A DNA stretch of 64,000 nt from Kudoa neothunni (lineage: Eukaryota; Animalia; Cnidaria). The translations under genes were made by a program, and so were the position numbers. The notes under the pieces were generated by a model, which did no database searches, was not told the DNA's origin, and saw only the letters and a program-made list of their open reading frames with translations. How positions within the stretch are numbered: the first letter of the stretch is position 1; each line of letters starts with the position of its first letter. Location of the stretch: positions 11,066,847 through 11,130,846 of the forward strand of contig OZ199839.1 in the NCBI GenBank assembly GCA_964304625.1, written 5' to 3'. Of the stretch, positions 4,821 to 37,887 are shown one piece after another.

Positions 4821-4934
4821 GATCATTGAATTCATTAGCCGATTACACTTATTTAAAGATTCATTCTATAATAGTGTTAAAATTATTTAAAGTTATTTGA
4901 CAATTATACGAATCGGAACGATAAAATATTGAAA
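4821..4934 (+). promoter_or_regulatory. Conserved proximal upstream block (promoter/5'UTR) of the surface-protein genes; also at ~22957-23070, ~25152-25265, ~35940-36053
   Basis: Near-identical gatcattgaattcattagccgattacactta...gaacgataaaatattgaaaATG in all four copies, preceded by a TATATAA/TATAAA-like box. Regulatory function is inferred. Confidence 0.55.
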
Positions 4935-6777
4935 ATGAAACTATTTTGGATTCTACTGATATGTAATTTTTTAATTTGTAATCAAAATGTTGATCCTTTT
5001 AGGTTGTCTCAATGTTCTCTATTCAAACGCCGAAATTATTGATAAAGATTATAGCAATAGTGAAAACCTTGAACATAAAGATAAGTCTCCCCCCGAATTA
5101 AAGCACCGAATTAAATGCATACTAAATCGGAATTTGCCGTTTAAACAATTTGACGCAGAAAAATACAATTACACTAATGAGGCGAGCCAAGTTTGCGATG
5201 TGGCACATTTTCTAAGTGACTCGAAGAATTATCTTAACACGCAAGAAAATAATTATGGTTTGAAAAGCCAAAGACTGCTGGAAATAATCGAAGTAAGTAA
5301 GTTTATAAAGCAGACAACATTTATTTCATTTAACTATGAAAAAATTAAATCAATTATTGAAAAATACATTGACAATATTAATAATATTATCCAAAACGAA
5401 AGTAAAATAAAAAGTGATGCCCAGTTGTTTAAAAATAAAAAAAGTGAATTTATTTCTGAATGGGAAGATTACAAAAACAAATACGACCAAATTAATGTGG
5501 CAAAGAGAGAAATAAAAGAAATTTTCGATTCCGTAGTCAGATCGAAACAAATTTGTTCCGGAAATGCGCAAAGCGTTGACGATTACGATCATATAATAAG
5601 CAAATATAGTGTAAAAGACCTCTTGGATACCAACTGGAAAACGATAACCGATAGCGCTGATGTGCTGAAAATTGCATGCGGAAATGAGAAAACTATTCCA
5701 AAAATCGATACAATTATAACCACGGCTTTTGATGATTATAAAGAGATTATTGAAGAAATCAGAGTGCAAGAAGATGATTTAACCAGTAAAGTTCAAGATT
5801 TGTCCAAAGAAGCTTCCAATTATAGTAGTCTGATAAATGATATCAACCAAATAACTCACAATAATTTAATTGCTAAATACGATCAACTAACGAAAGATTA
5901 TAATGATGCTGTTAAAATGATTGAAACTAACAAAAGGGAACGGAGTTTCTGGAGCGATTATCTCAGAAGGGTATCTGTTCACGTATTAAAGAAAAGCGAA
6001 GCTGAAAAAGATTCATTTGAGAAAGCGATTAGAGCTCTGAAGGAATATTTAAATGAGAATATAGACAAAGATGGAAATGAAGAAAAACTTAAAATATTAA
6101 CAGGACGCCTGGAAAACGTAATCGAAAATTTGCACACCCAGAGGGATACAATGCTAAACATAGCCAAATTAAATGCGAAAAACGTAGAAATCACGGAAAA
6201 ATGGATTAAAGCTATCTCTGATGCATTAGAATCACGATTTTATAAAAATAAAGACCGATATCGGAATATATATGTGGGAAATTCGACTCCCAGCAATACC
6301 TACGCTTTCAATAGAAGCGCGACATCTATTACCGAATATGTAAACGAACTTAAATCAACGGTGGAAAATATAAGAGAAGGATTGAGTAAAAGCACCCAAC
6401 TTTTTAATTCTGCATCAATTAACAAGGATAGAATTGAAAATGAAGGGAAGGAAGTGGAGAAAATATTTGAATCCCTACACATCAACGTACCGACTGCGCC
6501 TAAAAACGACGGGGGTAATTCAAAACCGAATATTATGAACCAAACAAGTGAGGTAACGACGGACCCAAAAATGAACAATGTTACAGCTGAAGAGCAAGAT
6601 CAATCATCAGAAACGACAACAGCTACAATTACCAATAATTCGAAAAGTCAAAGCAAATCTAGTTTGATTGCTATCGTGGCAACTGTGTTAGGGCTTTTGG
6701 TGATTATTATTATTGTTGGAGTGGTAATATACCGAACCAAATTGGCAACCAATCAAAAGTTCAACGATAAAATTTAG
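4935..6777 (+). CDS. Surface-protein family copy 1 (type A): type-I membrane protein, ~600 aa; exon1 4935-4962, 40-nt intron 4963-5002, exon2 5003-6777
   Basis: ATG at 4935 plus a phase-1 GT..AG intron gives MKLFWILLICCLNVLYSNA-EIID, a good signal peptide. Long helical K/N/E/I-rich ectodomain with 4 Cys, T/S/N-rich stalk, TM helix (LIAIVATVLGLLVIIIIVGVVIY) and tail RTKLATNQKFNDKI. The same exon layout occurs in all paralogues. Confidence 0.9.
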
Positions 6778-6949
6778 TCTTTGTTTGATGCAAAATTCAT
6801 ATTTATTTAATTCATTTTTAGTATTTTAGATTTATATGGAAAATTATTATTTTTTTATATTCATGTCTGAGTTTTATTTATGAAATTATAGAATTATTTT
6901 ATTATTATAGTGAATTTATATATAATAATATAAATGGTTTATAAAATAA

Positions 6950-6985
6950 CTAGTGCGAAAACCCAAGCGTTGCCGAGGAGTGGGT
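6950..6985 (-). mobile_element. Helitron-like 3' end immediately downstream of type-A genes (also 27272-27305)
   Basis: On the minus strand a hairpin (CCCCGGCAAGGCCGAGG in the copy 3 flank) is followed by CTAG/CCAG then T. It lies exactly where the type-A and type-B 3' flanks diverge. Confidence 0.55.
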
Positions 6986-9900
6986 TAATTTAAAATTAAA
7001 AATGGTACTGGCTATTCTTATGGTAATAAATATCTTCTATAATAGCTAAGATATTACAAAACTGATTTCATTAATGTGAAAAGCTATTTTTTATTTCCTC
7101 AAAAATAAAATTTCATAAAGATATCTTTTTATTAAAATTCACTGGTGAGTTTGAGCTTTATATCGTAGTTGGTTCTTTAAATTTGCCTACGTATATCCCC
7201 GTTTGTCAAAATAATACTTTGTGGAATTTTTATTTAGTGGAGTAAATACTTTATTAAATATACAAATAGGCATAATTTCACAATTTCTAATATTTGACAC
7301 TTGAGAATTCTTTTGACGATGTTGTATTTGGGCATTTTAGATATTGAGGTTTATTCAAATTTATATTGCTTACACAATAATATAATTTTAAATCTTATTT
7401 TAAAATTTGTTATCTGGATTAAAAGTTCTTATCAATAATTAATAAATCGTTAAATTTAAAATATTTGAGTAACAATCTTACCTCAAGAGAAACTATACGC
7501 AATATTCTCTAAGTGTTATTTTCGTTAGCCTCACATTTCACAAAAATATTTACTTCTGTTAAAATTTTTGTAGATGAGTGAATGATTATTATTAAATTGA
7601 GATTTTATTTCCTTACCATGATTATTTATGACAATTTATTGATTTGTGATTTTTCTAGGCGGGGGTCTCATAAATTGCCGCTATACTCTACGGAAAATAA
7701 CGTTAATATTCAAAACATATGAGAATTTTTTAGTATCAAATTAAAATTTCAAAATGGATTCCTTTTTTTAATTTCACCACTTCTTTATCAACTGCATACG
7801 TTGATTATCAACATATAAATTTTTTTTCATTGTACATTAATGCGGTTTAAATAATAGCATTATTCAAACTTTATGCATCAAATTTTGACCATAAAATCTC
7901 CTAAATTTATTATACATAACCGTTATCAATCTTAAATTAAAACCAATAAATATATTTAGAAATTTCTTTAAAAATCAACAGCTTTGCAGCACTACAAAAG
8001 AGGTTTCGTGCATATTAGACAAGGTTACTTTGGCCGGCTAGATCGCATGGCGCACCTGGTTTATGACTAAAACCCCTGAACTTATTAGTAATATGAAAAA
8101 CGTCATTATCAATCTTAAAACACGTTTTGCCGCTAGTGTATTCACGAATAAATGCATTTCAAGTGAATTCAATGAATATAGGATGATTAAAGGACTATAC
8201 TCATCAGAAATGTTTAATAAGAAACTAACTTAATAAATTTTGTATAAACGAGGGAATAAATAATAGCTTTACACATTAATAAAATCAATTTTATAATATC
8301 TTAGCTATTCTAGAAGATATTCCTTACCGTAAGAATAGTCAGTACCATTGAAAATGCGATTACCGTATCGAATAGTCTTGATACTCGAAAATATCTAAAA
8401 TTATTCTAAATTTCGATTCGAAGGTTCTCACTTTAATTGTTTAAGAAATAAGCTAAAGCAATGTATATCGACTTCTACTATCTCTGAAAAGTAACACATA
8501 CTTCCCGGCTTCGTTAGTTATAAGGAATATTCTCCATTGAAAAGTTGGTCAAACCATTCAAACAATACATTACTCTCTTCAATTAACCTATAGAAGTGTA
8601 TATATGGTAATTACACACATTATTGGTTGGAAAAATTAAAATATAATAGTTATATTGTAATAAAAATAATAAAAAATGTGCAAAACAAATTTGTAACCGA
8701 CCCAATGTGGAAAATACAGTACACACTACTCTACGAGCTGAAATATTTTACTGAGTCCCATTTTTATTACACATTTTTATTGGGTGAAAGAAACTGTCTC
8801 AAAAAAACGTATGAATAAAATAATGCGTATGGAATATTTTTAAAAGATTGTAAATGTATTGATGTCCAAAGGTTGATCATATCGTAACTATTAAATTTTA
8901 ATTATAAAATTTTTATCATAAAATGGTGGCAGTGGGTATTGCAACGAATCCGTTTAACCTGTATGCTCGGACTGTCTATTGTAACGGGAGGAAATAACCC
9001 TTAAACTAACATGTCAATTAAATTTTAAACTTCATTTTTATAATTGGTGACTTTTTTGAAAAATAATTTAAAAATTTGGGGAAATTATAGTAGGTAGAAT
9101 TTTCGGTAATGAGGAGTGTGTAGCACCTAGAAACCACTATCTTGCGCATGTTCCTTCATTCTAATTTTTCACGATTGTTTATAATAAAATAATATCGAGA
9201 GCAAAGATTCAGCACAAAATAACAACTTCTAAATTCTAACAATTCTTAAACCGAACATTGTGGGGTGCACGTGCAATCTCCATCATGAGACAATGAACAT
9301 TGAATTTTCTCTTTCTCTCTTCTCTTAATAACTCGACTGTTACATATTATCAATATTTAAATTTTTGTCTACTATAATATAACAATTTTAAAACGATAAA
9401 CTTAAAAAAAGGTCTTCCACATTTTTCACAAAAAATATATTTTCTATTACATAAATATGTTGTGTTAACTACTAATGTATATAAACAAGTTTACAATAGG
9501 TATTTTTAGTTTATAATTTTTTTGGACGATTTATATTTACTTATAGGATTGTTATACTATCATTTTTATTAACATTTATTAATTGCAAAAATTATGCATG
9601 TAAATATCAACAATTCTAAATGTTCATTATGTCAAAGGCCTCATCAAAAAAATCTGTGCACAAATATTTTATTGAAAATTATTTATTTAACAATTCTTTT
9701 GAATAAATAAAAATAGAAGCCAGAATCCATGTAAGATTTTAAAAACGGTGACAATAATTTACAATTTTTTATTGTTATTCTTAATTCATTAATTCAGGTA
9801 TTCTCAACCGGAGGGAAATGACGAGGGGTAAATTAAATAACATCCAAATTGGATGTGGAATTTTTTGCTTAATGTGCTTGAGATGTACTGCAGGATTTCT

Positions 9901-10067
9901 AAGGAATTATATTATGTGAGGATATTAAAATCAATATGAAATAGGGAGAAATTCTTCCAAAACTTTGTAGGAATAAGTATTTAACAGTTATTTTTAAAAC
10001 TATTATCAATCTCTATCTTTTATATCTCTTTTATTTTTTGGTGATGCATCCCCTAATAATTATAATA

Positions 10068-10920
10068 CAGTAAGAAACCAAATTCACGTAATCCCCTCGG
10101 GACCAAGGAAAAGTGCGTAAAACCGGTCACGTCCAATTTCACTCACCCGCGTGCGCAATTATTCAGAAAAAATTGGCACTTAATAATGATTAAATTGCGT
10201 TTATAAAGGCTAATTAACTATATATTAATTTTTAAATGATAATTAAAACTCGAGAAACGTGTTAACAGTACAAAAATATTTGTCAACGATCTATGAAATA
10301 CTCTTCTTGTTGCTATCGGTAGAATACGGCAGTTTCGTCTACATTTTAAAAATAATTTTCAGAGTATCTTTTAAAAAATGTTCTGATTTAATTCGTCTAT
10401 TACGAAGTAGTTTCAGATGTAGAAACAGTAGATTACCTAATAAAATTTGATTTTTTAATGTTGGACCTTTTTTTAAAGAGCAAAACCTGCCACGAATTGC
10501 ACATGAAGGCAAACCTTTTTCTTTGACGAATTGATTTCTCTTGATAATTATCGTGAAGACGCTTATTACAATCTTTCTGCTTCGTGTCCACCCAATCCAC
10601 TCATATACATTTTCATCAACAAAATTAAATTGTCTTGCATACAAATTATTTCTATTTTTAGATTATAAAACCATTTATATGTTTTGATTATTTTATTTTC
10701 CATCTCTAGGATGACATTAGGAGTCGGGATAATAGATATTTTAAAATGTGATACAGTGACAGTTTTTGGGTCGTTAGATTGAAGACTTTCATAATAACTA
10801 GTAATATTGTATTCTTCGACAATAGGTATAGTTATAGGAGTTTATGACATTAAATATTAACTTAACTAAATGATAAACAAGAAGCACCCAGGAAAAGTGC
10901 GTGAAATTGGTTACCTACTG
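10068..10920 (-). mobile_element. pogo/Tigger-like element, internally deleted
   Basis: TA TSD; TIRs CAGTAAGAAACCAAATTCACG / CGTGAAATTGGTTACCTACTG; CENP-B-type HTH remnant DENVYEWIGWTRSRKIVIS; exact empty site (attataaTAatactta) at ~30135-30150. Confidence 0.85.
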
Positions 10921-10954
10921 TAATACTTAACATGACTATTTTCATGGTAATTAA

Positions 10955-13268
10955 CCCATTCGAGTTTTATGTATCGAAAATGATACACCAGTATTTCGAT
11001 TGTATATCTATATATAAATAATATACCTATTTTTTCCCCATTTTAATTTAAGTGAAAAATAAAAATTGTTTATAATATAACGATATAAATGTAAAATTAT
11101 TTATTTGGAAGTTTTACTGATTCTTTTTTTTCCGTCCGCCTAAGTATGGGCATCGGCACGAAAAAATGTTTCTGTTGTGCTAGAAGAAACTGAAACTGCT
11201 AACATATATTATCTTTTGAATTAATTTTACATTGTATTCAATTTAAACATCATACCTAAACTGATTGCGGAAATAATATACTTTAACTAGTGTATCATTT
11301 TCGATGCATAAAACCCAAGTGTTTACGGTAAACTCTCAAAATGAACGTCACTGAGTATTTAAAATTACCTGATGCAATCAAAAATTTTGACGAAATTTGC
11401 GATAACACATTACTGATATTGTTGAACTTCCGCCTGACAATGTTGGTGTAGTTACTGATGAAGAGGACAGTTATATTCCCATTGGCGATAATATCATCAG
11501 AGACAATGATATCCATGATATTGCGGGTCATATTGAAATATTTACTATTTTAGGAGATCCGGGAGAAATAGAATTTATTGAAAAGGTTTTATGGAGAAAA
11601 TATACGAATGAATTAATTCAAAAAAGAGAAAACAGGGGTGAAAATGTACCAATTCAATATGATCTATACCCAGGTTTTTTTGAATTAAATCTGTTATTTT
11701 AACAAAATTTAGATTCATATGAAATATATAAGCAATTATTTGATGACAATCTTGTATTGAAAATAGTTAAGCAGACAAATATTTACTCTCGCCAGAAGAA
11801 TGATCATGACTTTCACGTATCTGTTAATGAAATGAAAAATTTCATAGGCATACTTATATTATCTGGTTATCATAACTTACCAAGACAGAAAATGTATTGG
11901 GAAACTGCTGAAGACTCTGGCGTCCAATTAGTTAAAAAAGCCATGACTTTAAAACGTTTTAAAGAAATTAAACGTTATGTACACTTTGCTGATAACAACT
12001 CAATCGATGTAAGCGATAAAATGGCTAAATTAAGACCGTTAATCGATAAGTTGAATGCTAATTTTAAAAAATTCTAGATTTTTGATAAAACATTATCAAT
12101 CGATAAACAAATGGTGCCTTATTTTGGTATGCACTCGGCCAAAATGTTTATAAAAGGCAAACCAGTAAGGTTCGGATTCAAGTTATGGATTATGGCCAGC
12201 AAGTCTGGTTATATATACAGCTTCAAAATTTATTGCGGTAAGAAAGAGCAAATAACCAATTTTGTCTCGGTGAGAATGTGGTTTTAAATTTTCTAAAGGA
12301 TATTGATGATTTAAGTGAAGTGGATCTTTATATTGACAACTTCTTTACATCCTACAAATTACTAAAGTTGTTGAAGGAAATGGATGTGGCGGCTACTGGT
12401 ACAGTAAGACCGAATCGAACTGGGAAGCGTCCTCTTTTATGCTTTAATGTTTTTTCCAAAAATAAAAGAGGATATTTCGAACAATATGAAGATTCTCATC
12501 AAATTTATTGTTCCCAATGGAATGACACGAAGCCGGTTATTGTAATGAGCAACCACTACACATGTTATCCATTAGTGTCCATAAAAAGATACTCCAAAAA
12601 GGATAACAAAAATATAATTATTGACCAGCCTCAAATGATACATAAATACAACAAAAACATGGGTGATGTTGATTTGGCCGATAATGGTATTGCCAATTAT
12701 AGAATTTCTATAAGAGGAAAAAAATGGTATTGGCCAATTTTCACTAACCTGATATCCATGTGTGTTGTTAACCCCTGGAAAATTTATAATTCCTTAACAG
12801 ACAAACCTATTGATCTTTTAGAGCACACCAGCGCAATCGTGTCAAATTTGATAAAAACCTCAAATGATATACCTAACAAGAAAAAATCCAAATTATCTCA
12901 AATTATTAAATCTAATATGTGCCCAAAGCCCCTAATAACAACTGATAAATCTGGAAAAAGACTGAGATGCGCCATATGCCATAAAATCACCGTATATTTT
13001 TGTGAAGGGTGCTCCACCGGACTCCATACAAAATGTTTCGCCCTATTTCACAGTTGACGAATAATTTTCAATATAGTGTCGTAATAATATAATTAAAACA
13101 ATTATTCTTATATAGTATTAATTAAGTTTTTATTTTTTGCACATGCACGTTCTCGGGGGTTTTATGTATCGAAAATGATACATTCATAAAATCGCAATAT
13201 TTTTTTAACCTATTATCACAGTTTAATTTTAATTCTTATAATTTTTTAATATAGAAAACCTGAATAGG
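10955..13268 (+). mobile_element. piggyBac transposon with disrupted transposase (PGBD3-like)
   Basis: TTAA flanks; CCCATTCGAGTTTT / AAAACCTGAATAGG ends; repeated subterminal motif gtatcgaaaatgatac. Motifs KPVRFGFKLW, YIDNFFTS, TGTVRPNR, YNKNMGDVDLAD, KKWYWPIF and a C-terminal Cys-rich domain. Stop at 12075 and frameshift ~12265. Empty site at ~30172. Confidence 0.93.
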
Positions 13269-13741
13269 TTAATAGTAATGGGTAAATAGTTGTGACTAAT
13301 TTAATTATGTTTAGGACATAAGAGCGAAAAAATTGGCAAGAAATAATTTACTTTGGAAAATCTGAAAAATAAAATCCATATAAGGCTTGTAAGAGTTGAT
13401 GGAATTAAAAACTGTCATTTTGCGAGCGTAAGTGTCTGTTAGGACAAAAATTTACCCCCAAACCTCAAATAACTCCTGCTATAACTAAACCAGTATAAAA
13501 CCTTACAGTAAAAGTGAATTTTGCTTCCAAGTTAAGGTAATAAATTTTAATTTTTTACCAGGCTGAGGGATAACTATGAAAAAACGGTTGAGAACCCTGC
13601 ATTAAACGATTATATTCGATTTGTTTTATTAAAAATAAAACACATTTAATATTTATTTCAGTATGGATTGAATATATTTTATTTTATTATTATTTTTATA
13701 ATCGTATTGGGATCGGATTTTAAATCTATACATCTTATAAT

Positions 13742-15140
13742 TAGAGAACGTCGTTTTAGACGTGTATTTTCCGATTTCAGCAGTGCGCATGCTCGTACAA
13801 AACGTTCTGCGAAAAATAGTACAATACGCGGAAAAACAATATGATTTTATAATTTACCGTTATAATATAATATTGAAAGTATTCTAAATCGTTCATTTGA
13901 CAAACGCATCCTATCTTGCGTGAATACATGTTGCAGAGCGCGGAAATGTTAAACATTCCCGCTGAAAATTTTCTTTTTCCGCAATGCCGCAAACGAATTG
14001 TGACATATCAGATAATTTCACATTATTAGAATTATAATATTGTGAAAAATCAATATTTCGAACAGTTTCGAAAGAGTGATCGGACGGAAAGCAACCTTCA
14101 ATTTGTTTATTAATTATTGTAAACATCTAAACAAATTAACAAATTTTGACATATTTCCGAAAATCTTTTCTCTTCTGTCTAATGGGAACATTTCCATGGA
14201 ATTTTTAAAATTATTTAATATATCTGTAGGGAAATATTGTAATTACATTTCATCCAATTATGGAGATGTGAAAACCATATGAACTCTTGGATTCGATCGG
14301 CGTGGAAAAATCATACAATGGAGACAAAGATATTTAAATGAATTTAAGGTAAATATGTAATTCGCTTAATGATTCATTGGATGTCTTAGAAATACTCATA
14401 AATGATGAAACAGAATCATGGGTTGAATTCAACAAAAAGTCGGAAATGGCTGGAAAATATTAAACACAGCGTTGTATACAATTGTATGTACTGTACCATC
14501 TTATGTCAAGTACTTGTGGGATCTCTTTTCGAAACACTATTCCATGATTCACAAGAATTTGAAGGAATGAATTTTTTGCAGATCTATTTTTATACAAAAG
14601 TGCAGAAAATTTCATGCAGAACTTGTTGACTCTATCAAACACAACGTCAACCGATCTTTTAACTGCCAGGTGTATCATCGACAAATACGTATCCACCAAG
14701 GAGCGACTGTTTGGGAATGATCTAGAAGGCCAACAATACTTTGACAAAAATCGTCGCAGATAACTTTTCTTATCAATCAGAAACAGCGGAACTCCATCAA
14801 AAACTACAATAGACACCTATTCTACATCTAAAAAAAATATTTGGCATAACGGACGTCTCTTTAAACGTTTTTTCAATGAAATGTGTTTTTTCGATTTCAT
14901 ATTCTCGTCAACTGTATTTTGTTTTAACGGAAGTTTTACTTTACAATATTTGCAAATTAATTCATTTTTAACATTTTCTATGTCCGTCCACTCTTCCAGA
15001 AAACTAGAAATTTCTCTCTTATGTCTAGCCATGTCTATGTTAACTCGGAAAAGATAGCCATCATTTATGCAAAATAAACGTCGAACTTTTAAAAAAATTC
15101 GACGGCTAAAATCGATTTTAATCGAAAACGATATTCCCTA
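13742..15140 (-). mobile_element. hAT element with CGGBP1-like zinc-finger transposase remnant
   Basis: Perfect 8-bp TSD CTTATAAT (13734-41, 15141-48); TIRs TAGAGAACGTCGTTTT / AAAACGATATTCCCTA; LICKYC..MKSKKH finger and VPLFLIDKKSYLRRFLSKY..FPNSRSLVDTYL. Confidence 0.85.
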
Positions 15141-15461
15141 CTTATAATATACCATATATATTCTTTATGCATTAAAGAAAGCTGAAATATCGTTAATTTA
15201 ATCATTTTTGCATATTCATAGATAGACATGTATTTATTTATTCAGTAATATATTTAATCATACTAAAAACGTTATTTAAAAGTTCTAATTTTTCCCCATT
15301 AATTGATCTGAATCATTCTTCGGATAAATATGCTTCTAAGATTTCAAAAGAAACTCCTCTTTTTATTCTTAGGAATTTTGTTTTCAGTCTTCCCCAGCAG
15401 GCCTCGATGGTATTAGTGTGAAACCCATCGCGAACATATTCTATAGAATGATTAATTTTTA

Positions 15462-27099: not shown

Positions 27100-30000
27100 T
27101 CTTTGTTTGATCCAAAATTCATATTTATTTAATTCATTTTTAGTATTTTAGATTTATATGGAAAATTATTATTTTTTTATATTCATGTCTGAGTTTTATT
27201 TATGAAATTATAGAATTATTTTATCTTTATAGTGAATTTATATAAAATAATATAAATGGTTTATAAAATAACTGGTGCGAAAACCTCGGCCTTGCCGGGG
27301 AGTGGGTTACTTTCAATATTAAAATGGTACTGGCTATTCTTACGGTAATAGATGACTTCTAGAATAGCTACGATGTTACAAAACTGATTTCATTAATGTG
27401 TAAAGCTGTTGTTTATTTCCTCGAAAATAAAATTTCATAAAGATATCTTTTTATTAAAATTCACTGGTGAGTTTGAGCTTTATACCGTAGTTGGTTCTTT
27501 AAATTTGCCTACGTACATCCCCGTTTGTCAAAATAATACTTTGTGGAATTTTTATTTAGTGGAGAAAATGCTTTATTAAATATCCAAATAGGCATAATTT
27601 CATAATTTCTAATATTTGATACTTGAGAATTCTTTTGGCGAGGTTGTATTTGGGCATTTTAGATATTGAGGTTTATTCAAATTTATATTGCTTACACATA
27701 ATAATATAATTTTAAATCTTATTTAAAAATTTGTTATCTGGATTAAAGTCCTTATCAATAATTAATAAATTTTTAAATTTAAAATTTTTGTAGATGAGTG
27801 AATTATTATTATTAAATTGATATGTTATTTCCGTAACATGATTATTTATGAAAACTTATTGATTTGTGACTTTTCTAGGCGTGGGTCTCATAAATTGCCG
27901 CTATACTTTACGGAAAATAATGTTAATATTCAAAACATATGGGAATTTGTTAGTATCAAATTAAAATTTCAAAATAAATTCCTTTTTTTAATTTCACCAC
28001 TTCTTTATCAACTGCATACGTTGATTATCAACATATAAATTTTTTTTATTGTAAATTAATGCGGTTTAAATAATAGCATTATTCAAACTTTATACATCAA
28101 ATTTTGACCATAAAATCTCCTAATTAGATAAAAAATGGTCTCCAATTATCGAATGTTGAGAATTGGAAAACGTAAATATTTCTCCTAAATTTATTATACA
28201 TAAACGCTATCAATTTTAAATTAAAACCAATAAATATATTTAGAAATTTCTTTAAAAATCAACAGCTTTGCAGCACTACAAAAAGGTTTCGTGTGTATTA
28301 GACAAGGTTACTTTGGCCGGCTAGAACGCATGGCGCACCTGATTCATGACTAAAACCCCTGAACTTATTAGTAATATGGAAAACGTCATTTTCAACCTTT
28401 AAAACACGTTTTGCCGCTAATGTATTTACGAATAAGTGCATTTCAAGTGAATTCAATGAATATAGGATGATTAAAGGATCATACTCATCAGAAATGTTAA
28501 ATAAGAAACTAACTTAATAAATTTTGTATAAACGATGGAATAAATAATAGCTTTACACATTAATAAAATCAATTTTATAATATCTTAGCTATTCTAGAAG
28601 ATATTCCTTACCGTATCGAATAGTCTTGATACTCGAAAATGTCTAAAATTATTCAAAATTTTGATTCGGTGATGATCACTTTAATTGTTTAGGAAATAAG
28701 CTAAAGCAGTGTATATATGGTAATTACACACATTATTGGTTGGAAAAATTAAAATATAATAGTTATATTGTAATAAAAATAATAAAAAATGTGCAAAACA
28801 AATTTGTAACCGACCCAATGTGGAAAATACAGTACACACTACTCTACGAGCTGAAATATTTTACTGAGTCCCATTTTTATTACACATTTTTATTGGGTGA
28901 AAGAAATTGTCTCAAAAAAACGTATGAATAAAATAATGCGTATGGAATATTTTTAAAAGATTATAAATGTATTGAAGTCCAAAGGTTGATCATATCGTAA
29001 ATATTAAATTTTAATTATAAAATTTTTATCATAAAATGATCGGACTGTCTATTGCAACAGGAGGAAATAACCTTTAAAATAACATGTCAATTAAATTTTA
29101 AACTTCATTTTTATAATTGATGATTTTTTCGAAAAATAATTTAAAAATTTGGGGAAAATATAGTAGGTAGAATTTTCGGTAATGGGGAGTGTATGGCACC
29201 TAGAAATCACTATCTTGCGCATGTTCCTTCATTCTAATTTTTCACGATTGTTTATAATAAAATAATATCGAGATCAAAGATTCAGCACAAAATAACAACT
29301 TCTAAATTCTAACAATTCTTAACCCGAACATTGTGGGGTGCAGTGCAATCTCCATCATGAGACAATAAACATTGAATTTTCTCTTTCTCTCTCCTCTTAA
29401 TGACTCGACTGTTACATATTATCAATATTTAAATTTTTGTTTACTTTAATATAACAATTTTAAAATGATAAAATTAAAAACAGGCATTTCGCATTTTTCA
29501 CAAAAAACATCATATTTTCTATTATATAAATACGTTGTATTAACTATTAATGTATATAAACAAGTTTACAATAGGTATTTTTAGTTTATAATTTTTTTGG
29601 ACGATTTATATTTACTTATAGGATGATTATACTTGCATTTTTATTAACATTTATTAACTGCAAAAATTGTATATGTAAATATCAACAATTCTAAATGTTC
29701 ATTATGTCAAAGGCCTTATCAAAAAAATCTGTGCACAAATATTTTATTGAAAATTATTTATTTAACAATTCTTTTGAATAAATAAAAATAGGAGCCTGGA
29801 TCCAAGTAAGGTTTTAAAAACGGTGACAATAATTGAATAATTTTTTATTATTATTCTTAATTAATTAATTCAGGGATTCTCAACCGGAGGGAAATGACGA
29901 GGGGTAAATTAAATAACATCCAAATTGGATGTGGAATTTTTTGCTTTATATGCTTGTGATGTATTGCAGGATTTCTAAGGAATTATATTATGTGGCGATA

Positions 30001-30934
30001 TTAAAATCAACATGAATTAGGGAGAAATTCTTTCAAAATTAGTTAGGAACATGTATTTAACAGTTATTTTTAAAACTATTATCAATCTCTATCTTTTATT
30101 CCCCTTTTATTTTTTGGTGATGCATCCCCTAATAATTATAATAATACTTAACATGATTATTTTCATGGTAATTAGTATTAATGGGTAAATAGTTGTGACT
30201 AATTTAATTATGTCTAGGACATAAGATCGAAGAAATTGGCAAGAAATAATTTACTTGGGCAAATCTGAAAAATAAAATCCATATACGGCTTGTAAGAGTT
30301 GATGGAATTAAAAATTGTTATTTTGCGAGCGTAAGTGTCTGTTAGGACAAAAATTTACCCCCAAACCTCAAATAACTCCTGCTATAACTAAACCAGTATA
30401 AAACCTTACAGTAAACGTGAATTTTTCTTCCAAGTTAAGGGGATAAATATGAAAAAACGGTTGAGAACCCCTGCATTATACGATTATATTTGATTTGTTT
30501 TATTAAAAATAAAACACAATTAATATTTAACTCAGTTTGGATTGTATATATTTTAACATATTATTATTTTTATAATCGTATTAGAATCGGATTTATAATC
30601 TATATATCTTATAATTAGGGAATGCCACATATATTCTTTATGCATTAAAAAAATCTGCAATATCGTTAATTTAATCATTTTTGCATATTCATAGATAGAC
30701 ATGTATTTATTTATTCAGTAATATATTTAATCATACTAAAAACGTTATTTAAAAGTTCTAATTTTTCCCCATTAATTGATCTGAATCATTCTTCGGATAA
30801 ATATGCTTCTAAGATTTCAAAAGAAACTCCTCTTTTTATTCTTAGGAATTTTGTTTTCAGTCTTCCCCAGCAGGCCTAGATGGTATTAGTGTGAAACCCA
30901 TCGCGAACATATTCTATAGAATGATTAATTTTTA
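27100..30934 (+). repeat. Type-A downstream flank, duplicate of 6778-15461 minus later TE insertions
   Basis: Collinear high-identity match, including the same 63-codon frame at 8627 and 28740. Homology stops at the MULE TIR at 15462. Confidence 0.9.
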
Positions 30935-32309
30935 TATGATTATAACCAAGCGATGATAAACTATTGTAGGCAGACCATAAATCACTAAAAATAGTCCACC
31001 CAGAAATGACTTCAGTCTTGATAATTTCGGTCAAGGTTTCGGAATTTCCTTTTTCGACGTAGAAGTATCGAACTTCCTTTAGTCATCTTTTGTTATTGTC
31101 GTCGACGTGACAAAGTGTCAAACAAAATATCCACGGCAGTCAATACAGTTACCGTATTTTTCTCTTCTTGCTGAATTTATATACTCAAATAAATTGAACA
31201 AGATAATCATATATTACTTTAGGAATTATCCGATACTACGTTCTCTGATGGTTCATATTGGCTTCAGCTCATATCATTGATTGCTATAAGATTAAAAGTA
31301 TAACAAGCCATAATAAAGAAATATGGTGCATTAAATAATAGAGATAATCACTTAGATCAACAAATTCTTTGTTTGGAGACGTCTTCCAAATATTTCATTT
31401 TAAACAACCGTCACGATTATTTTTTCGTTTTCCATGGAGAAGGGTTTCATCTATTCCAACTACGAAATCTTCTCCACTAAATTTGACTCGTTGATTAAAG
31501 TTGAGGGTGCAAATATCTCCAAGCTTCGTAAACCACATGGCCACCGTTTTCTTGTCCGAATCAATCATTTCGGAGGCGGATAAAATAGAATTATCCATAG
31601 ATCCGTAATAAATAATTTTAAAAAATTTTTTGACTGTCAGGTTATGAGATGGACCATGACAACTTGAAATAGAAAAGAACGTCCCGTTCCTCGGAGATAC
31701 CTTGGTTTTGCATCTGACTCCCGTTAAGGTGGTTTTTAGAGACAACGTTATTACTTTTTACAAAAATAGCAAAACGTATAATCATAATCATTCTGTTAGT
31801 ATGATGTCACTTTTGGCATAGGTCTTCTGACATTCGATTTTCGTTTTGTTAATGAAAAACATTTAAAATTATAACATTTAGAGCACCTATGAGGTTGAGA
31901 ACGAAGATACCCTTTATGTAGCAATGCATTAAATAATTTCATGGGATCATTAATTAATGGAAAAAGGCGCCATCTCCTAGAAAACTTAACGAATCCATTT
32001 CCTTAACACATGCTAAGCTAACCCATTATTTTATTAACAAAGTTTATATGTTGTTCAATAATAAATCATGAAAGTCAAGGTTAATTTGAAAATAAGAGAA
32101 AATTCAGTGTTTACTGTCACATGGAGGAGATTGTACACGCATTCGACAGTGTTCAGGTTAAGAATTGTTAGAATTTAGAATTTGTTATTCTGAGCTGAAT
32201 CTTTGCTCTCGGTATTATTTTATTTTATTATAAACAATCGTGAAAAAATTAGAAAGAAGCAACATGCACAAGATAGTGATTTTTAGGTGCCACACACTCC
32301 CCTATTACC
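29178..32309 (-). mobile_element. Probable Merlin element with ~165-bp TIRs, containing the hAT MITE and a decayed ISXO2-type transposase
   Basis: 29178-29345 is the reverse complement of ~32140-32309 (GGTAATGGGGAGTGT...). Internal VVGIDETLLHGKRKNNR (31395-31745). The TSD is not clean. Confidence 0.65.
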
Positions 32310-32929
32310 ATTATTTCTTCTTTCATTCGGTTGGTTGGTTATTCTATACCTGATTATCTTATTTCGAATTATGCTCGTTGGTATCGTTTTTTACTTTAAG
32401 TTAGTTATATCATTTTAAATGAGTATTTTGTAACAATGTTTAATATTTTTTCTAGTCTTGAAATATTATTATTTCCAATGTAGCTTTAATTATCTTAATG
32501 GCAATCATTGAACTAAGGATAAATTCATTGCAATATTCTGCAGACGTTGGCCTATATTTGTTTACAATCATTGCTGCAAACAAACCACATTAACACAAGC
32601 TCACGTGTTCTTAATTTAAGTCTCGTATATATCGATATTCTAGTTGTGTAAAATCAACGCAACATTTAAAAATCACTTATACAACAACTTAAGTATGGAT
32701 TTATTGAAGCAAAGTATTAAACAATGACGGCATATTTGGCCAATTTAGAGGAAAAAGTCGACTAATTTATTTTCTTTTTAAAATTTATTTAACAGTAGTT
32801 CATTTATTGTTATATGTATTTATGAAATTAAAATTTTCATACGTACGTTATTTTGGTAGATATTCCCATCCGTTGCAATAGCCACTATCATTTTTTAAAG
32901 TGAGTCCCCTATTAGGCATCTTTCGAGAG

Positions 32930-35121
32930 GCCTGTTTGAAAACTGAATCCGACTATAATCAGTGCGTGGATGAGCAGATGATTCCATTTAAAGGTATTTA
33001 CGAGAAATGAGTCTGGTGGTATTGTTCATGACATTTTTCTGGAAGTGGCAATTTTACTTATGATGGCGAAATCTCGGGTTTTCAATACTCCGACATCGTT
33101 TTAAATTGGCCCAGTCTATTGAAAAGGGAAACAGACACCACATACATTTTGATAATTATTTTTCAACGCTCCCGCCGCATTCGATTATACTCAAAATGGG
33201 TCATCATTCCATGAGTACGATGAGAAGAAATCGCCTCCGTAATTGTCCTATCAGTGACGATAAGACTTTTAAAAAATTGAAAAGGGGCAGTTACGAATAT
33301 GCGCTATATGTAGACAAAGATTCAAAAACTAATATTGTGTGTTGGTTAGACAGATCCGCCTTAACTGTGACATCGACAGCTCACTCTATTTCTCCTATGA
33401 GCGCTATCGACAGATACGATCGAAAAGAGAAAAAAAGTTGTAAAAATCGATTGGACCATAAATCCAAAAAATGGTATAAGAGGATATTTTTGTGGGCCAT
33501 TATGCCAATGTTTTATAAAGATGTCTTCCAACGTTTACATCATTGTTGACCCTGTGGCCTCATTATGAAATATCACTAGTTCTTTCTATTAGTATTTAAG
33601 CCCTCATTATTATCTTTATATCATCACATTTCACCTGTTTTATATTCACGTATGCGTCACGAGAGGTTTTGACAATATCCTTAAAGGATAACTTATCTAC
33701 AAATGCCAATGCTTGTTAGACGAAATTCCCGCACAACAGTAAGAAATACAATGAATAATGGCTCAAGATAGATATCATATATAAATCATAGTTATTATAA
33801 TACATAATTATTTGAGTTTCCAGTTATAAGTTGTTGCAACGGCTTTAAAAAAGAATAAATCATATGAGAGTTAATTATGACATGTTTTTCAAGTCATTTA
33901 TTTTTATGTGATGCTTTAATTTCTGGGTCATTGGTAGGGTTACACAATTGGAACATTTCCAGTCCAGCAGAACTTTGTTGGGTTTTTAAGTTTATAGTAA
34001 ATGTCATTTATCCCGAATGAGCTTTTTCGATGGGGAATAGAAACGTCTATTAAAAATTTCGGCATTGTTGGAAGTAAGTTTTTTATTATTGAATATTCGA
34101 TCACAGGCATTCCACGATTCAATGAGGTATTACTTTTAATATAGTTTTTGTTAAAATATTCTAGGAAATGATCTATATTGACATTTTTAAATATACTTGA
34201 TTCGTCGTACAATTTTTTAAATTCTTTCTCAACGACATCTCTAGGAGCAAACGCAAGCGAGGAAATCTATTTTATGTAAAAAAACTCATAATGGTATATC
34301 ATATCTTGGGGTTTTTAGTTTATGAATGACAAAATTTACATTCGCGCGATTGTCCATTTTGTTTTATTCGTATTCACGAAGTTAATTGTTGTGATAAATT
34401 ATTATTTACTCACACGCGTGGGCCGGCAAATGTTTGTCTATGGTAAAAATTTGTCATACTATTTTTTGGGGCCATTGATTTGTGTATCCTTAACAGATGA
34501 CTTTTCTACAAACGCTAATGCTTGTTAAACGAAATTCATGCCAAAAATATTCGCTGTTTAATGGATTTTGGCGTTTCGGTGAGCGAGCAATGGATGCATG
34601 TGTATCAGGTGTTAAATATGATGAGGAAGAGAGGTAAACCCTCCACATCCGATTTTGTTCCTACATCAATTCCAATGACAGCTAGGGTCTATAATCTTTT
34701 TGATTCAAAGGTAAGTACAAATGTACGATTTGACGAAATATCTCATTTCCCAGAATAAATAGCGGCTAATGTAAGATGTTAATTTTGTGGACTGCATTCC
34801 AGAACAATGTGTCTTAAATGCGATGTCCACTTATGCTTAAATATAAGTATAAACTGCTTCTTAGACTATCATACAAAAAAATAAATTTTTTTATTACGTT
34901 TGTCTGTTATACGTGTATTTTTTGGGAACGACAACACCTTTATAAATTTTTGGGCATGTGCACGACAATTTTTGAGGCCAAGATGTCTCCGAATGATGCC
35001 ATATGACACCATTAAGTAATAGACTTCCTACTTAAATATTCCTTTAATTTTTGCATATATTATTAATTTAATTTTTTAAAATATTTTCTCACTCCTTGGT
35101 TTTCAGGTCTCAAAGAGTTAA
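32930..35121 (+). mobile_element. Decayed piggyBac with a nested MULE-like fragment (~33900-34280, minus strand)
   Basis: VDEQMIPFKG, HFDNYFST, KSKKWYKRIF and Cys-rich tail CLKCDVHLC; right end ..gagTTAA. Nested SLAFAP..FLEYFNKNYI motif typical of MULE transposases. Confidence 0.7.
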
Positions 35122-36053
35122 GTAGAAATTTAAAAATCCGCGCTCGCAAAAGACATTGTTTACTTGATTAATAAGCAATTATTTATTATGTAAAATATTT
35201 TAACTTCGGCTACTTAAATTAAAAATGTTGACGTATCTATTAATTAAGAATATGGAGACTTCAAGGAAAAACAGTACATAATAATGGCAATTTTTACACG
35301 TCTACAGAGGAGTAATCTGCTTTTTTAAATAATTGATAATTAATTTTTGCTTAATATATATACAGCCATGTGTTCAGATATAGTACAAATTTACATAAGA
35401 ACCGAATGTTTAATCTAAGTTTTAAAAGGAACATTTATCATTAAATAATCTAGGAATATTTTTGTTTTAAATATTGCATTGGTATATATGTTACATTGTA
35501 TAGTCGTACGGTGATGATTGCTACTTTTATCCGGAAATATGATTAAATAGTTCTTCCGGTTTCCGGTTATCGAGGTTCGACTGTATTTGAAAATCATTAT
35601 TTTTCGCGATTATAAACTTTTCTTGGTCAGGGAGTTTGTTATTTCCCAAAGTAGACAATTATCACTATAAAAATCCACAAGAAAATTAATTAATAATTAT
35701 AAGGTAAATATAATTTTGAATTTTCTAAATTTATGATTTTATAATTATCGGAACCGTTAAGTTTTGATAATGACCAAAATTAGAATTATGTTAATGAATT
35801 TATAGTTAGTTCATATTGACGCTAAAGATTACCCGATTTTTCGTATTATTTGAATTGGTTGGCCATTTATTTAATTAAATCGGGTGAATTAATTATAAAC
35901 AATTATTTACGAAAAGAATATGGTATGTGTGTATAAAGGGACCATTGAATTCATTAGCCGATTACACTTATATAAAGATTCTATCTATAATAGTGTTAAA
36001 ATTATTTAAAGTTATTTGACAATTGTACGAATCTGAACGATAAAATATTTAAA

Positions 36054-37887
36054 ATGAAATTATTTTGGATTCTTCTGATATGTAATTTTTTAATTTGGAA
36101 TTATAGTTTTGATTCTTCTAGGTTGTCTCAATATTCTCTATTCATACGCCGAAATTATTGATAATGATTATAGGAATAGTGCAAACGACACATCATTTGA
36201 AATGAAGCACCGAATTAAATGCATAATAAATCAAAATGTGCCGTTTAAACAATATGACGCAAAAAAATACAATTTTACTAATGAGACGAACCAAGTTTGC
36301 GATGTGGCAGATTTTCTAAGCGGCTCAAAGAATAATCTTAACACGCAAGAAAATGAATATGGTTCGAATAATCAGAAATTGTTGGAAATAATCGAAGTAA
36401 GTAAGTTTTTAAATCAGACGAAGTATATTTCAAATAACTATGAAATAATTAAATCAATTATTGAAACATACATTGGAAATATTACTAATATTATCCAAAA
36501 CGAAACTACATTGAAAAGTGCTGCCGCGTTATTTAAAAATAAAAAAAGTGAATTTATTTCTGAATGGGAAGATTACAAAAACAAATGCGACAAAATTAAT
36601 GCGGCAAAGGGAAAAATAAAAGATATTTTCGATTCAATAGCCAAATCGATAAAAATTTGTTCTGGAAATGTGAAAAGCGTTGCCGATTACAATTACGTAA
36701 TTAGCAATTATAGTGTGACCAAATATTTGGATGATAATTGGAAAATAATTACTGAAGGTGCTAAAGAGTTGAAAACTGCGTGTCAAACCGACAACGAAAA
36801 GACTATTCCTACCATATACGCATGTATTACCACGACTTTTGATAATTATAAACAGATTTTAAGCAAAATTAACAATCAAAAAGACGATTTAATCAGTAAA
36901 GTTCCAGAGTTAACCCAAGAAACTTCAAATTATCGTAGTCTGATAAACGATATCAATAGAATAACTCAAGATAATTTATTGACTAAGTATAACCTGCTGA
37001 TGGTGAGTTATAATGACGCCCTCAAAATGATTGAAAATAATAAACGGGAAAGGAGTTTATGGAACGATTATATCGTTAGAGTGACTGTTCATTTATCAAA
37101 GGGAAGCGCAACAGAAAAAGATTCATTCGAGAAAGCAATTACTGCTCTAAATGGATATTTGAAAGAGAATATAGACGAGGATGGAAATGAAGAGAAACTT
37201 AAAATATTAACAGAACTTTTGGGAGACGTAATCAAAAATTTTGACACCCAGAGGGATACAATGCTAAAAATAGCCAAGTTGAATGCTGAAAATGTAGATA
37301 TCACAATTAAATGGATTAAAGCTATCTCTGGTATAATAAAATCACAATTTTATGAGAATAAAGACTATTATCAGGATATATATGTGGAAAATTCGACTCT
37401 CAGCAATACCTACGCTTTCAATAGAAGCGCGACATCTATTACCGAATATGTAGACGAACTTAAATTCACGATGAAAAGTATGAGTGAAGGATTGAGTAGA
37501 AGCACCCAACTTTTAAATTCTGCTTCACTCAATAAGGTTGGAATTGAAAATGAAGGGAAAAAACTGGAGAAAATATTTGAATCCCTACAAATCAACGTAC
37601 CAAATGTGCCTAAAAACGGCGGAGGTAATTCAAAACTGAATACTATGAACCAAACAAATGAGATAATGACGGCCCCAAAAATGAACAATGTTGCAGCTGA
37701 AGGGCCAGACCTATCATCGGAAACGACAGCAGTTATAATTATTAAAGACTCGAAAAGTCAAAGCAAATCTAGTTTGATTGCTATCGTGGCAACTGTGTTA
37801 GGGCTTTTGGTGATCATTATTATTGTTGGAGCGGTAATATACCGAACCAAATTGGCAACCAATCAAAAGTTCAACGATAAAATTTAG
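36054..37887 (+). CDS. Surface-protein family copy 4 (type B), ~597 aa; exon1 36054-36081, intron 36082-36121, exon2 36122-37887
   Basis: Spliced N-terminus MKLFWILLICCLNILYSYA-EIID; open frame; same architecture, with two extra Cys (NKCDK, YACIT). Confidence 0.9.

What the first reader, a model, noticed from the sequence alone, without database searches (positions are those of the whole stretch)
5429..37216. Ectodomains are patchwork mosaics with switching nearest neighbours (segmental gene conversion)
Seen: near-identical nucleotide tracts link different pairs. Copy1=copy3 at 5716-5835/26038-26157 (ITTAFDDYKEIIEEIRVQEDDLTSKVQDLSKEASNYSSL). Copy1=copy4 at 5430-5485/36531-36587 (FKNKKSEFISEWEDYKNK). 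Copy3=copy4 at 25805-25890/36593-36678 (INAAKGKIKDIFDSIAKSIKICSGNVK) and at EIIDNDYRNSANDTS. Copy2=copy4 at 23346-23447/37113-37215. Copy2=copy3 at 23741-23855/26722-26835 (LYNSASRNKDGIEHEGKKLKKIFESLH). No single duplication tree explains these pairings. Inference: recurrent short-tract conversion shuffles variable modules while preserving the frame.
Basis: partly seen in the sequence, partly recalled or inferred. Interest (0 to 1): 0.85.

Follow-up and report, generated by a model that had tools for sequence, protein, structure and literature searches.

The report
Gene-conversion mosaics in Kudoa surface-protein genes
Neighbouring copies of an undescribed membrane-protein gene in the fish parasite Kudoa neothunni are real patchworks of one another, the classic footprint of gene conversion between tandem paralogues, which is a well-known process seen here in a new gene family.

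Summary

- **Organism:** the genome matches the published Kudoa neothunni assembly. This myxozoan parasite was assembled from yellowfin tuna reads.
- **Genes:** the window holds four of six close copies of an orphan ~600-aa type I membrane protein. It has a signal peptide, an all-helical ectodomain, a stalk and a TM segment.
- **Array:** the six genes form three tandem repeats of a two-gene unit. Flanking DNA sorts them cleanly into X type (A, c1, c3) and Y type (P, c2, c4).
- **Mosaic:** the coding sequence breaks that tree repeatedly. There are 9 segments with 7 topologies, and identical tracts of 60-350 nt link non-orthologous copies.
- **Statistics:** the PHI test, a GENECONV-style test, a runs test and a single-tree simulation all reject a single history.

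Repeated interlocus gene conversion is the best explanation. Copies A and P, outside the window, are the nearest partners for many segments.

Nothing shows programmed antigen switching, because every copy is an autonomous gene. I could not check the mosaics against raw reads.

The scan found the same phenomenon before in other surface-protein families of this genome. This is a new member of a known kind, of moderate interest.

The parts
4935..6777 (+). Copy c1 (X type). Exon 1 is 4935-4962, the 40-nt GT..AG intron is 4963-5002 and exon 2 is 5003-6777. The product is 600 aa.
   Evidence: The flanks are 97-99.7% identical to copy A, but the ectodomain is only 81-85% identical.
23071..24118 (+). 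Copy c2 (Y type), a 335-aa variant. An in-frame deletion runs from just after the splice acceptor to the middle of the ectodomain. Exon 1 is 23071-23098 and the intron is 23099-23138.
   Evidence: Its 3' flank is 96-98% identical to P and c4.
25266..27099 (+). Copy c3. It has X-type flanks but a Y-type N-terminal half, and is the most obvious mosaic. Exon 1 is 25266-25293 and the intron is 25294-25333. The product is 597 aa.
   Evidence: the 5' flank is 98% identical to A, while the N-half is 90% to P, 86% to c4 and only 77-80% to A and c1. One search lists the nearest-neighbour switches.
36054..37887 (+). Copy c4 (Y type). Exon 1 is 36054-36081 and the intron is 36082-36121. The product is 597 aa.
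5715..5817 (+). Tract identical between c1 and c3 (the partner lies at 26037-26139), 103 nt. In the same columns A equals P instead.
   Evidence: In the GENECONV-style test it spans 32 polymorphic sites with global P = 0.0002.
25763..25996 (+). The longest exchange tract. c3 is identical to copy P for 234 nt (P lies outside the window at C2:11064254-11066037). c4 shares the inner 84 nt (25805-25888 = 36593-36676).
   Evidence: The tract covers 84 concordant polymorphic sites with global P = 0 in 5000 permutations.
26559..26834 (+). In c3, a P-identical tract (26559-26700, 142 nt) is followed by a c2-identical tract (26722-26834 = 23741-23853, 113 nt).
23345..23442 (+). Tract identical between c2 and c4 (partner at 37114-37211), 98 nt.
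   Evidence: Pairwise P = 0.0008.
5430..5485 (+). c1=c4 tract (partner about 36534-36587), 53 of 54 identical. It is immediately followed in c4 by the c3/P-type tract.
6594..6946 (+). 3' anchor. The stalk, TM, tail and start of the 3' UTR of c1 are identical to copy A for 353 nt. The stalk/TM/tail is 90-97.5% identical among all six copies, and the first 68 nt after the stop codon are 97-100% identical.
4643..4962 (+). 5' anchor of c1, comprising the upstream region and exon 1. It is 96-98% identical within the X type and 86-89% between X and Y. The equivalent blocks precede c2, c3 and c4.
3317..42664 (.). Two of the three tandem two-gene units (c1...c2 and c3...c4). They are collinear with the upstream unit A...P at 89-98% identity. 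The spacers carry piggyBac and MULE transposase remnants at 12278-13057 and 16241-17613.
   Evidence: Self-BLAST of 124 kb and Pfam.
44918..46775 (+). A seventh, distant family member in pieces. An N-terminal ORF lies at 44918-45373 and a C-terminal ORF with TM at 46110-46775. It takes no part in the mosaic.
   Evidence: hhalign against the family profile gives E 5.5e-28 and 1.5e-11.

Best explanation
The window lies 0.9 Mb from the right end of chromosome 2 of the myxozoan Kudoa neothunni. It carries four of six close paralogues of an orphan family of type I membrane proteins. Each protein has a signal peptide split by a 40-nt intron, an all-helical ectodomain of about 465 aa with four invariant cysteines, a disordered Ser/Thr/Asn-rich stalk, one TM helix and a 15-aa tail. 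The six genes are three tandem copies of a two-gene unit (X gene, spacer, Y gene).

X and Y units share only a homology block of about 2.3-2.7 kb around the gene. Inside that block, repeated non-allelic gene conversion between array members has copied patches of 25-350 nt from one gene into another. Short double exchange would leave the same pattern.

The gene ends are almost homogenised among all six copies. These ends are the upstream region, exon 1 and intron on one side, and the stalk, TM, tail and first part of the 3' UTR on the other. The helical ectodomain keeps deeply diverged sequence (dS 0.2-0.5) that is reassorted into new combinations.

Shown: the mosaic, its statistical incompatibility with one tree, the flank-versus-core conflict and the array structure. 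Inferred: that conversion is the process, its direction (for example a Y-type N-half copied into c3), that the near-identical ends serve as homology anchors, and that the product is a host-facing surface protein whose diversity is useful to the parasite.
For: Organism: the contig sizes are 17,154,348, 12,040,071, 11,048,340 and 18,219 bp, summing to 40,260,978. These match the K. neothunni assembly in PMC12239612, which reports 40.2 Mb, N50 12.0 Mb, three chromosomes and an 18,219-bp mitochondrial contig.

Array structure: self-BLAST shows three collinear units. Beyond about 170 nt after the stop codon, the 3' flanks are 92-99.7% identical within a type and unalignable (52-60%) between types.

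Conflict in the core: c3's N-half is 90% identical to P but 77-80% to A and c1. A and c1 have flanks 97-99.7% identical but ectodomains only 81-85% identical, with dS 0.25-0.35. Because synonymous sites are also diverged, selection on the protein alone cannot explain this.

Incongruence: clean 2|3 split sites fall in blocks. Parsimony segmentation gives 9 segments and 7 topologies. The AU test rejects every tree with the flank-defined P+c4 pair in 5 of 9 segments.

Unbiased tests: PHI, GENECONV-style fragments, the quartet runs test and the single-tree simulation with mimicked site rates.

Protein: the family alignment of 18 members has 4 invariant Cys. The AF2 model has pLDDT 81 and is all-helical over residues 20-480, disordered over 489-543 and has a TM helix.
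Against: The assembly was built from only about 7x HiFi k-mer coverage with hifiasm-meta and purge_dups. A scaffold gap lies just before the window start.

The segments used in the AU tests were chosen from the same data, so those P values are optimistic. One genome cannot show non-reciprocity, event rate or direction. Some shared tracts may be inherited from unit duplication rather than converted.

dN/dS in the ectodomain is 0.4-0.8, so there is no gene-wide signal of positive selection. Expression and surface location are untested.
Confidence: 0.8

Rival explanations
1. The mosaics come mainly from reciprocal unequal crossing-over between misaligned tandem units, which creates chimeric genes and changes unit number, rather than from short-tract conversion.
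For: The genes sit in a tandem array of three units with different spacer lengths (18 kb, 18 kb and 10.8 kb). c2 and c3 lie only 1.2 kb apart, as if a unit junction had formed there. The in-frame deletion in c2 shows that rearrangements do occur.
Against: Each crossover gives one breakpoint and exchanges everything distal to it. Here the flanks on both sides of each gene keep their own type, while several internal patches of 25-260 nt switch partner and switch back. c3 alone switches at least five times within 1.8 kb.
Confidence: 0.1
2. The patchwork is an assembly or consensus artefact, arising from paralogue collapse, chimeric contigs or cross-correction in a low-coverage metagenomic HiFi assembly.
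For: Coverage was about 7x, haplotypic duplication was purged, and a 200-N gap sits at window -199..0. Copy P, within 3 kb of that contig end, carries eight single-base homopolymer insertions that look like read errors.
Against: The window is one gap-free contig. HiFi reads are longer than a whole gene plus its flanks, and assemblers do not splice 50-250-nt patches between copies that differ by 10-20% on either side. The mosaic is significant without P, using the quartet A, c1, c3, c4, and within the four window copies alone. The reported assembly QV is 48.5.
Confidence: 0.05
3. The array is a programmed diversity generator. Conversion would occur at high frequency during infection to produce new surface variants, an antigenic-variation system like VSG, vlsE, msp2 or ves1.
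For: The features that fit are conserved 5' and 3' ends around a variable core, a position in the distal chromosome arm, a family enriched near chromosome ends, many perfectly identical and therefore recent tracts, and an elongated helical ectodomain on a stalk. Antigenic variation has been reported in myxozoans with the mechanism unknown (preprint 10.64898/2026.02.11.705288).
Against: There is no expression-site and silent-cassette architecture. Every copy has its own upstream region, start codon, signal-peptide exon, intron and full ORF. There are only six close copies. No within-sample variation or expression data are available. dN/dS is below 1.
Confidence: 0.05
4. There was one duplication tree with strong rate variation along the gene, or convergent selection, and no exchange.
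For: Variability does differ strongly along the gene, with conserved ends and a variable core.
Against: In 200 simulations on the ML tree with the observed site-rate pattern, the longest identical tract was 92 nt and there were at most 2 topology segments, against 266 nt and 7 segments observed. Shared tracts are identical at synonymous sites. Incompatible splits are spatially clustered.
Confidence: 0.01

Closest known systems
Interlocus (ectopic) gene conversion in tandem multigene families, for example MHC and KIR loci or globin and opsin duplicates (established knowledge)
   Same: It shows phylogenetic incongruence along paralogues, patches of identity bounded on both sides, flanks that keep the duplication history, and near-homogenised segments beside diverged ones.
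   Different: The family is an undescribed orphan in a myxozoan. Divergence of the core relative to the flanks is extreme, with dS 0.25-0.35 against 0.3-3% in the flanks for the A-c1 pair.
Mosaic surface-antigen families of parasites, such as Pneumocystis msg (PMC5676039, listed), Plasmodium var/rif, Babesia ves1 and Trypanosoma VSG mosaics (the last three from my own knowledge)
   Same: It is a multicopy family of membrane or surface proteins placed towards chromosome ends. Conserved gene ends flank a variable ectodomain, and new combinations arise by segmental exchange between paralogues.
   Different: There is no evidence for mutually exclusive expression, an expression site or silent cassettes. 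Only six close copies lie in this cluster, with about 20 distant ones elsewhere. There is no sequence or significant fold relation to any of those families, and the organism is an animal (a cnidarian).
Trypanosome elongated helical-bundle surface receptors such as HpHbR, the factor H receptor and ISG65
   Same: It is predicted to be an elongated antiparallel helical bundle carried on the membrane. These receptors are among the top weak structural matches.
   Different: The matches lie within the noise for helical proteins (Foldseek E >= 0.04, TM 0.18-0.33; VIA Z 7.6-9.0 where helical models typically reach about 13). Here the anchor is a TM helix after a disordered stalk.
'RIFIN/STEVOR-like' genes reported in the myxozoan Sphaerospora molnari (PMC11792419; preprint 10.64898/2026.02.11.705288)
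   Same: They are lineage-specific multicopy myxozoan membrane or secreted proteins proposed as immune-evasion factors. A sub-threshold RIFIN Pfam match also appears here, over the stalk/TM region of c2 and of the ORF at 46110-46775.
   Different: The Pfam RIFIN scores here are 11-17 bits against a cut-off of 32. The match covers only the low-complexity stalk and the TM helix. I did not compare the S. molnari sequences directly.

Membership tests
Interlocus gene conversion among paralogues (process) | Different parts of the alignment support incompatible trees, and the incompatible sites are spatially clustered. | tested here: met
   PHI gave 0 of 2000. There are 9 segments and 7 topologies. 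The quartet runs test gave 35 runs against 83 +/- 5. The single-tree simulation also failed to reproduce the data.
Interlocus gene conversion among paralogues (process) | There are tracts of unexpectedly high identity between otherwise diverged copies, bounded on both sides. | tested here: met
   The GENECONV-style permutation test found 15 fragments with global P <= 0.026 and spans of 33-260 nt. Identical runs reach 353 nt.
Interlocus gene conversion among paralogues (process) | Flanking DNA keeps the original paralogue identity, so there is no crossover of the flanks. | tested here: met
   The 3' flanks are 92-99.7% identical within a type and 52-60% between types. c3 has X-type flanks but a Y-type N-half.
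Interlocus gene conversion among paralogues (process) | Transfer is non-reciprocal and observed as events, with the donor unchanged. | not testable with these tools
   This needs several isolates or pedigrees.
Programmed antigenic variation by cassette conversion (VSG, vlsE, msp2 type) | There is one expression site plus promoterless or truncated silent donor cassettes. | tested here: not met
   All four window copies have the conserved upstream block, an ATG, a signal-peptide exon, a GT..AG intron and an open exon 2.
Programmed antigenic variation by cassette conversion (VSG, vlsE, msp2 type) | Variants arise within one infection, and expression is mutually exclusive. | not testable with these tools
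   No read or RNA data could be reached. The genome paper notes that very few RNA reads mapped to the parasite.
RIFIN/STEVOR (Pfam PF02009) | The Pfam match is above the gathering threshold. | tested here: not met
   c2 scores 11.3 bits (E 0.33) and the ORF at 46110-46772 scores 17.4 bits (E 0.0045), against a cut-off of 32. RIFIN is not among the 25 most frequently matched families across the 18 members.
Giardia-type VSP | The ectodomain is cysteine-rich (>10% Cys) with many CXXC motifs. | tested here: not met
   Only four invariant Cys are conserved across about 465 ectodomain residues, and there are no CXXC repeats.
Trypanosome three-helix-bundle surface receptor fold | There is a significant structural match covering the domain. 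| tested here: inconclusive
   The best Foldseek hit, HpHbR, has E 0.041 and TM 0.10/0.18. VIA gives Z 9.0 (4e40), below the level of about 13 that is common for helical models.

The most novel reading that the evidence does not exclude
These tandem arrays, with near-identical 5' and 3' ends around a reassorting helical ectodomain, could be the molecular basis of the antigenic variation reported in myxozoans. Frequent mitotic conversion between array members would create new surface variants during infection. That would be the first variant-antigen system of the protozoan type described in an animal.
Probability: 0.06. Interest if true: 0.85.

Novelty: new member of a known kind. Interest (0 to 1): 0.4.

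Why it matters
Myxozoans are economically important fish parasites, and their host-interface proteins are almost unknown. Two Sphaerospora papers state that antigenic variation has been seen in myxozoans but that its mechanism is unknown. The K. neothunni genome paper does not use the words surface, paralog or orphan.

This locus gives a concrete and testable candidate. It is an orphan family of about 20-30 membrane proteins concentrated towards chromosome ends. Its closest copies demonstrably exchange ectodomain segments, and its conserved ends would allow the whole repertoire to be amplified from isolates.

The process itself, gene conversion between tandem paralogues, is textbook. The scan has already reported it for other families of this genome.

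Tried and rejected
- **Homology searches came back empty.** The search for homologous proteins on c1 found no hit. A profile of 18 family members searched against 1.84 billion representatives gave nine hits with E between 2e-5 and 9.4e-4, all to the stalk/TM end. Pfam gave only sub-threshold coiled-coil noise. The ESM Atlas feature search gave nothing usable.
- **Fold searches were not informative.** Foldseek against the PDB gave nothing below E 0.04. VIA wide gave a best Z of 11.4 to the IKK1 scaffold domain, which is generic for long helices.
- **A nematode origin was considered and dropped.** I suspected Strongyloides because of the three chromosomes, 40 Mb and AT-richness. There is no SL1 RNA and no cuticle-collagen N domain, and the assembly sizes match K. 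neothunni exactly.
- **Hudson-Kaplan Rm was uninformative.** Observed Rm was 44, against a mean of 63 in single-tree simulations, because recurrent mutation at this divergence scatters incompatibilities. Only clustering-based statistics are useful here.
- **Read-level validation was not possible.** No place was reported as human-like.
- **The joined gene model was used locally only.** I joined exon 1 and exon 2 inside a local script to check the reading frame. No search tool received the joined model, and all searches used exon 2 by reference.
- **Not run:** GC-biased conversion, breakpoint motifs and mapping of variability on the structural model.
Full report
**What the sequence is**

The window is AT-rich (25-35% GC) and gene-poor. 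It carries four related ORFs on the + strand. The genome has four contigs of 17,154,348, 12,040,071, 11,048,340 and 18,219 bp, totalling 40,260,978 bp. The smallest contig carries COX1 with TGA read as Trp.

These figures match the Kudoa neothunni assembly in PMC12239612. That paper reports 40.2 Mb, scaffold N50 12.0 Mb, three chromosome-scale scaffolds and an 18,219-bp circular mitochondrial contig. A nematode origin, my first guess, was rejected.

The assembly came from about 7x HiFi k-mer coverage of parasite reads in yellowfin tuna data. It was built with hifiasm-meta, purge_dups and Hi-C scaffolding. The window is C2:11066847-11130846, 0.9 Mb from the right end of the 12.04-Mb chromosome 2. 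A 200-N scaffold gap lies immediately before window position 1.

**The genes**

Each window copy has three parts:
- a 28-nt first exon (MKLFWILLI...);
- a 40-nt GT..AG intron, in line with the 49-nt median intron the paper reports;
- one long second exon.

The gene models are as follows:

| Copy | Exon 1 | Exon 2 | Product |
|---|---|---|---|
| c1 | 4935-4962 | 5003-6777 | 600 aa |
| c2 | 23071-23098 | 23139-24118 | 335 aa |
| c3 | 25266-25293 | 25334-27099 | 597 aa |
| c4 | 36054-36081 | 36122-37887 | 597 aa |

I joined the exons only inside a local script to check the frame. Every search used exon 2 by reference.

c2 lacks the N-terminal half of the ectodomain through an in-frame deletion that begins right after the splice acceptor.

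Two more close copies lie just upstream of the window:
- A is at C2:11046209-11047993 (window -20638..-18854).
- P is at C2:11064254-11066037 (window -2593..-810).

A genome search found about 20 further full-length relatives at 19-26% identity. Of the 15 clusters I count, 11 lie within 1.25 Mb of a chromosome end.

An alignment of 18 members shows four invariant cysteines and a shared architecture. The AlphaFold2 model built on that alignment has mean pLDDT 81. It is all-helical over residues 20-480 with helices of up to 56 residues, disordered over 489-543 (the Ser/Thr/Asn-rich stalk), and ends in a TM helix and a short tail.

Nothing related was found by any search:
- the word-indexed protein search;
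- a profile search of 1.84 billion representatives, which hit only the TM/stalk end with E between 2e-5 and 9.4e-4;
- Pfam;
- the ESM Atlas;
- fold search, where Foldseek's best E was 0.04 and VIA's best Z was 11.4, within the noise for long helices.

This is therefore an orphan type I membrane-protein family. Surface exposure is inferred from topology only.

**Array structure gives the expected tree**

I ran a self-comparison of 124 kb around the window. It shows that window -22318..+3105 is collinear with 3317..42664 at 89-98% identity. It also shows that the block beginning at c3 repeats the block beginning at c1.

The six genes are thus three tandem copies of a two-gene unit: (A...P), (c1...c2) and (c3...c4). 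The spacers carry piggyBac and MULE transposase remnants.

The flanks confirm two gene types:

| Region | Within X (A, c1, c3) | Within Y (P, c2, c4) | Between X and Y |
|---|---|---|---|
| 3' flank beyond ~170 nt after the stop | 92-99.7% | 96-98% | 52-60% (unalignable) |
| 5' block | 96-98% | 87-92% | 86-89% |

The duplication history therefore predicts (A, c1, c3 | P, c2, c4).

The c3=c4 N-terminal match holds too.

With A and P added, the picture is sharper. The identical runs include:

| Pair | Length (nt) | Position in the window copy |
|---|---|---|
| c3=P | 234 | 25763-25996 |
| c3=P | 142 | 26559-26700 |
| A=P | 166 and 93 | outside the window |
| c1=c3 | 103 | 5715-5817 |
| c2=c3 | 113 | 26722-26834 in c3 |
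| c2=c4 | 98 | 23345-23442 in c2 |
| c1=A | 353 | 6594-6946 |

**It is not chance or rate variation**

- **Clustered splits.** Sites with a clean 2|3 split among the five full-length copies fall into blocks that support incompatible pairs. Going along the gene these are A+c1, then c1+c3 with A+P, then P+c4, then A+c3 with P+c1, then c1+c4.
- **PHI.** PHI is 0.30, against 0.517 +/- 0.008 in permutations of the coding region. It is also significant for the four window copies alone (0 of 2000 in each case).
- **GENECONV-style test.** This permutation test gives 15 fragments with global P <= 0.026.
- **Segmentation.** Parsimony segmentation needs 9 segments with 7 different topologies. The best single tree costs 153 extra steps, against 86 for the segmented model.
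- **AU tests.** These reject all trees containing the flank-defined P+c4 pair in 5 of the 9 segments. The segments were chosen from the same data, so these P values are optimistic.
- **Without P and c2.** Leaving out the doubtful copy P and the truncated c2, the quartet A, c1, c3, c4 supports the three topologies with 57, 49 and 24 sites. They fall in 35 runs, against 83 +/- 5 expected (0 of 10000).
- **Simulation.** Two hundred alignments simulated on the single ML tree with the real site-rate pattern never gave more than 2 segments or an identical tract longer than 92 nt. The observed values are 7 segments and 266 nt.
- **Rm.** Hudson-Kaplan Rm was uninformative at this divergence.

**Mechanism**

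The flanks of each gene keep their type, while internal patches of 25-260 nt switch partner and back. c3 alone switches at least five times in 1.8 kb. That pattern points to gene conversion or closely spaced double exchange. Single unequal crossovers do not produce it, although they probably built the array.

For the A-c1 pair, the flanks differ by 0.3-3%. The ectodomain differs by 15-19%, with dS 0.25-0.35. Synonymous sites are as affected as non-synonymous ones, so protein-level selection alone cannot explain the contrast. Old, diverged ectodomain sequence persists and is reassorted, while the gene ends and surrounding unit are young or homogenised.

The ends are close to identical in all six copies. 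The stalk/TM/tail is 90-97.5% identical and the first 68 nt after the stop are 97-100% identical. It is a reasonable inference that these ends provide the homology that starts or resolves the exchanges.

The X-type flanks and Y-type N-half of c3 suggest that c3 was the recipient there. Direction otherwise cannot be read from one genome.

dN/dS in the ectodomain is 0.4-0.8. This is relaxed or mixed constraint, not gene-wide positive selection.

**What it is not shown to be**

Every copy has its own upstream block, start codon, signal exon, intron and open frame. There is therefore no expression-site and silent-cassette layout, and no evidence of programmed switching.

Weak RIFIN Pfam matches (11-17 bits against a cut-off of 32) cover only the stalk and TM and are rejected.

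An assembly artefact is unlikely. The window is one gap-free contig, HiFi reads exceed gene length, and assemblers do not splice 100-nt patches between copies that are 10-20% diverged.

**Context and verdict**

Interlocus gene conversion in tandem families is textbook biology. So are mosaic surface-antigen families near chromosome ends in parasites, for example Pneumocystis msg (PMC5676039).

Follow-up agents of this scan already reported conversion mosaics in other surface-protein families of this same genome. The K. neothunni paper does not discuss such families. Two Sphaerospora molnari papers say antigenic variation occurs in myxozoans with the mechanism unknown.

The finding is real. It is a new member of a known kind and is moderately interesting.

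Noticed in passing
outside the window, C2:11064254-11066037 (window -2593..-810); gap at window -199..0: Copy P reads as a pseudogene only because of eight +1 insertions. All eight extend homopolymer runs, and there are no nonsense codons in 593 aligned codons. P lies within 3 kb of a contig end in an assembly of about 7x coverage, so it is probably an intact gene with consensus errors rather than a true pseudogene.
   Followed up: partly
window 23071-24118: c2 is a half-length in-frame variant of 335 aa. The deletion starts right after the splice acceptor and removes the N-terminal half of the ectodomain, while the signal peptide, C-half, stalk and TM remain open.
   Followed up: partly
window 44918-45373 and 46110-46775: A seventh, distant family member lies in two ORF pieces, an N-terminal and a C-terminal part (hhalign E 5.5e-28 and 1.5e-11 to the family profile). 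The middle is disrupted, so it is either a decayed gene or another stretch of consensus errors.
   Followed up: partly
window 12278-13057 (+) and 16241-17613 (-): A piggyBac-type transposase fragment (DDE_Tnp_1_7, E 9e-27) and a MULE/SWIM transposase (E 1e-18 to 9e-29) sit in the spacer between c1 and c2. The MULE block is duplicated with the unit (97.6% identical to window -13888..-10769).
   Followed up: no
window 51424-52047 (-): This ORF has a fibronectin type III domain (E 1.2e-6). It may belong to the FN3-like surface families that other notes describe in this genome.
   Followed up: no
genome-wide: loci L009-L029: About 20 distant members of the same family (19-26% identity) lie mostly within 1.25 Mb of chromosome ends, in 11 of the 15 clusters I count. 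Several occur as tandem or dispersed pairs, for example four genes at C3:10.25-10.30 Mb.
   Followed up: partly
window 1-3105 versus 39549-42664: A 3.1-kb block at the window start is 97.3% identical to the block downstream of c4. It is the tail of the upstream unit (A...P), interrupted by the scaffold gap.
   Followed up: partly
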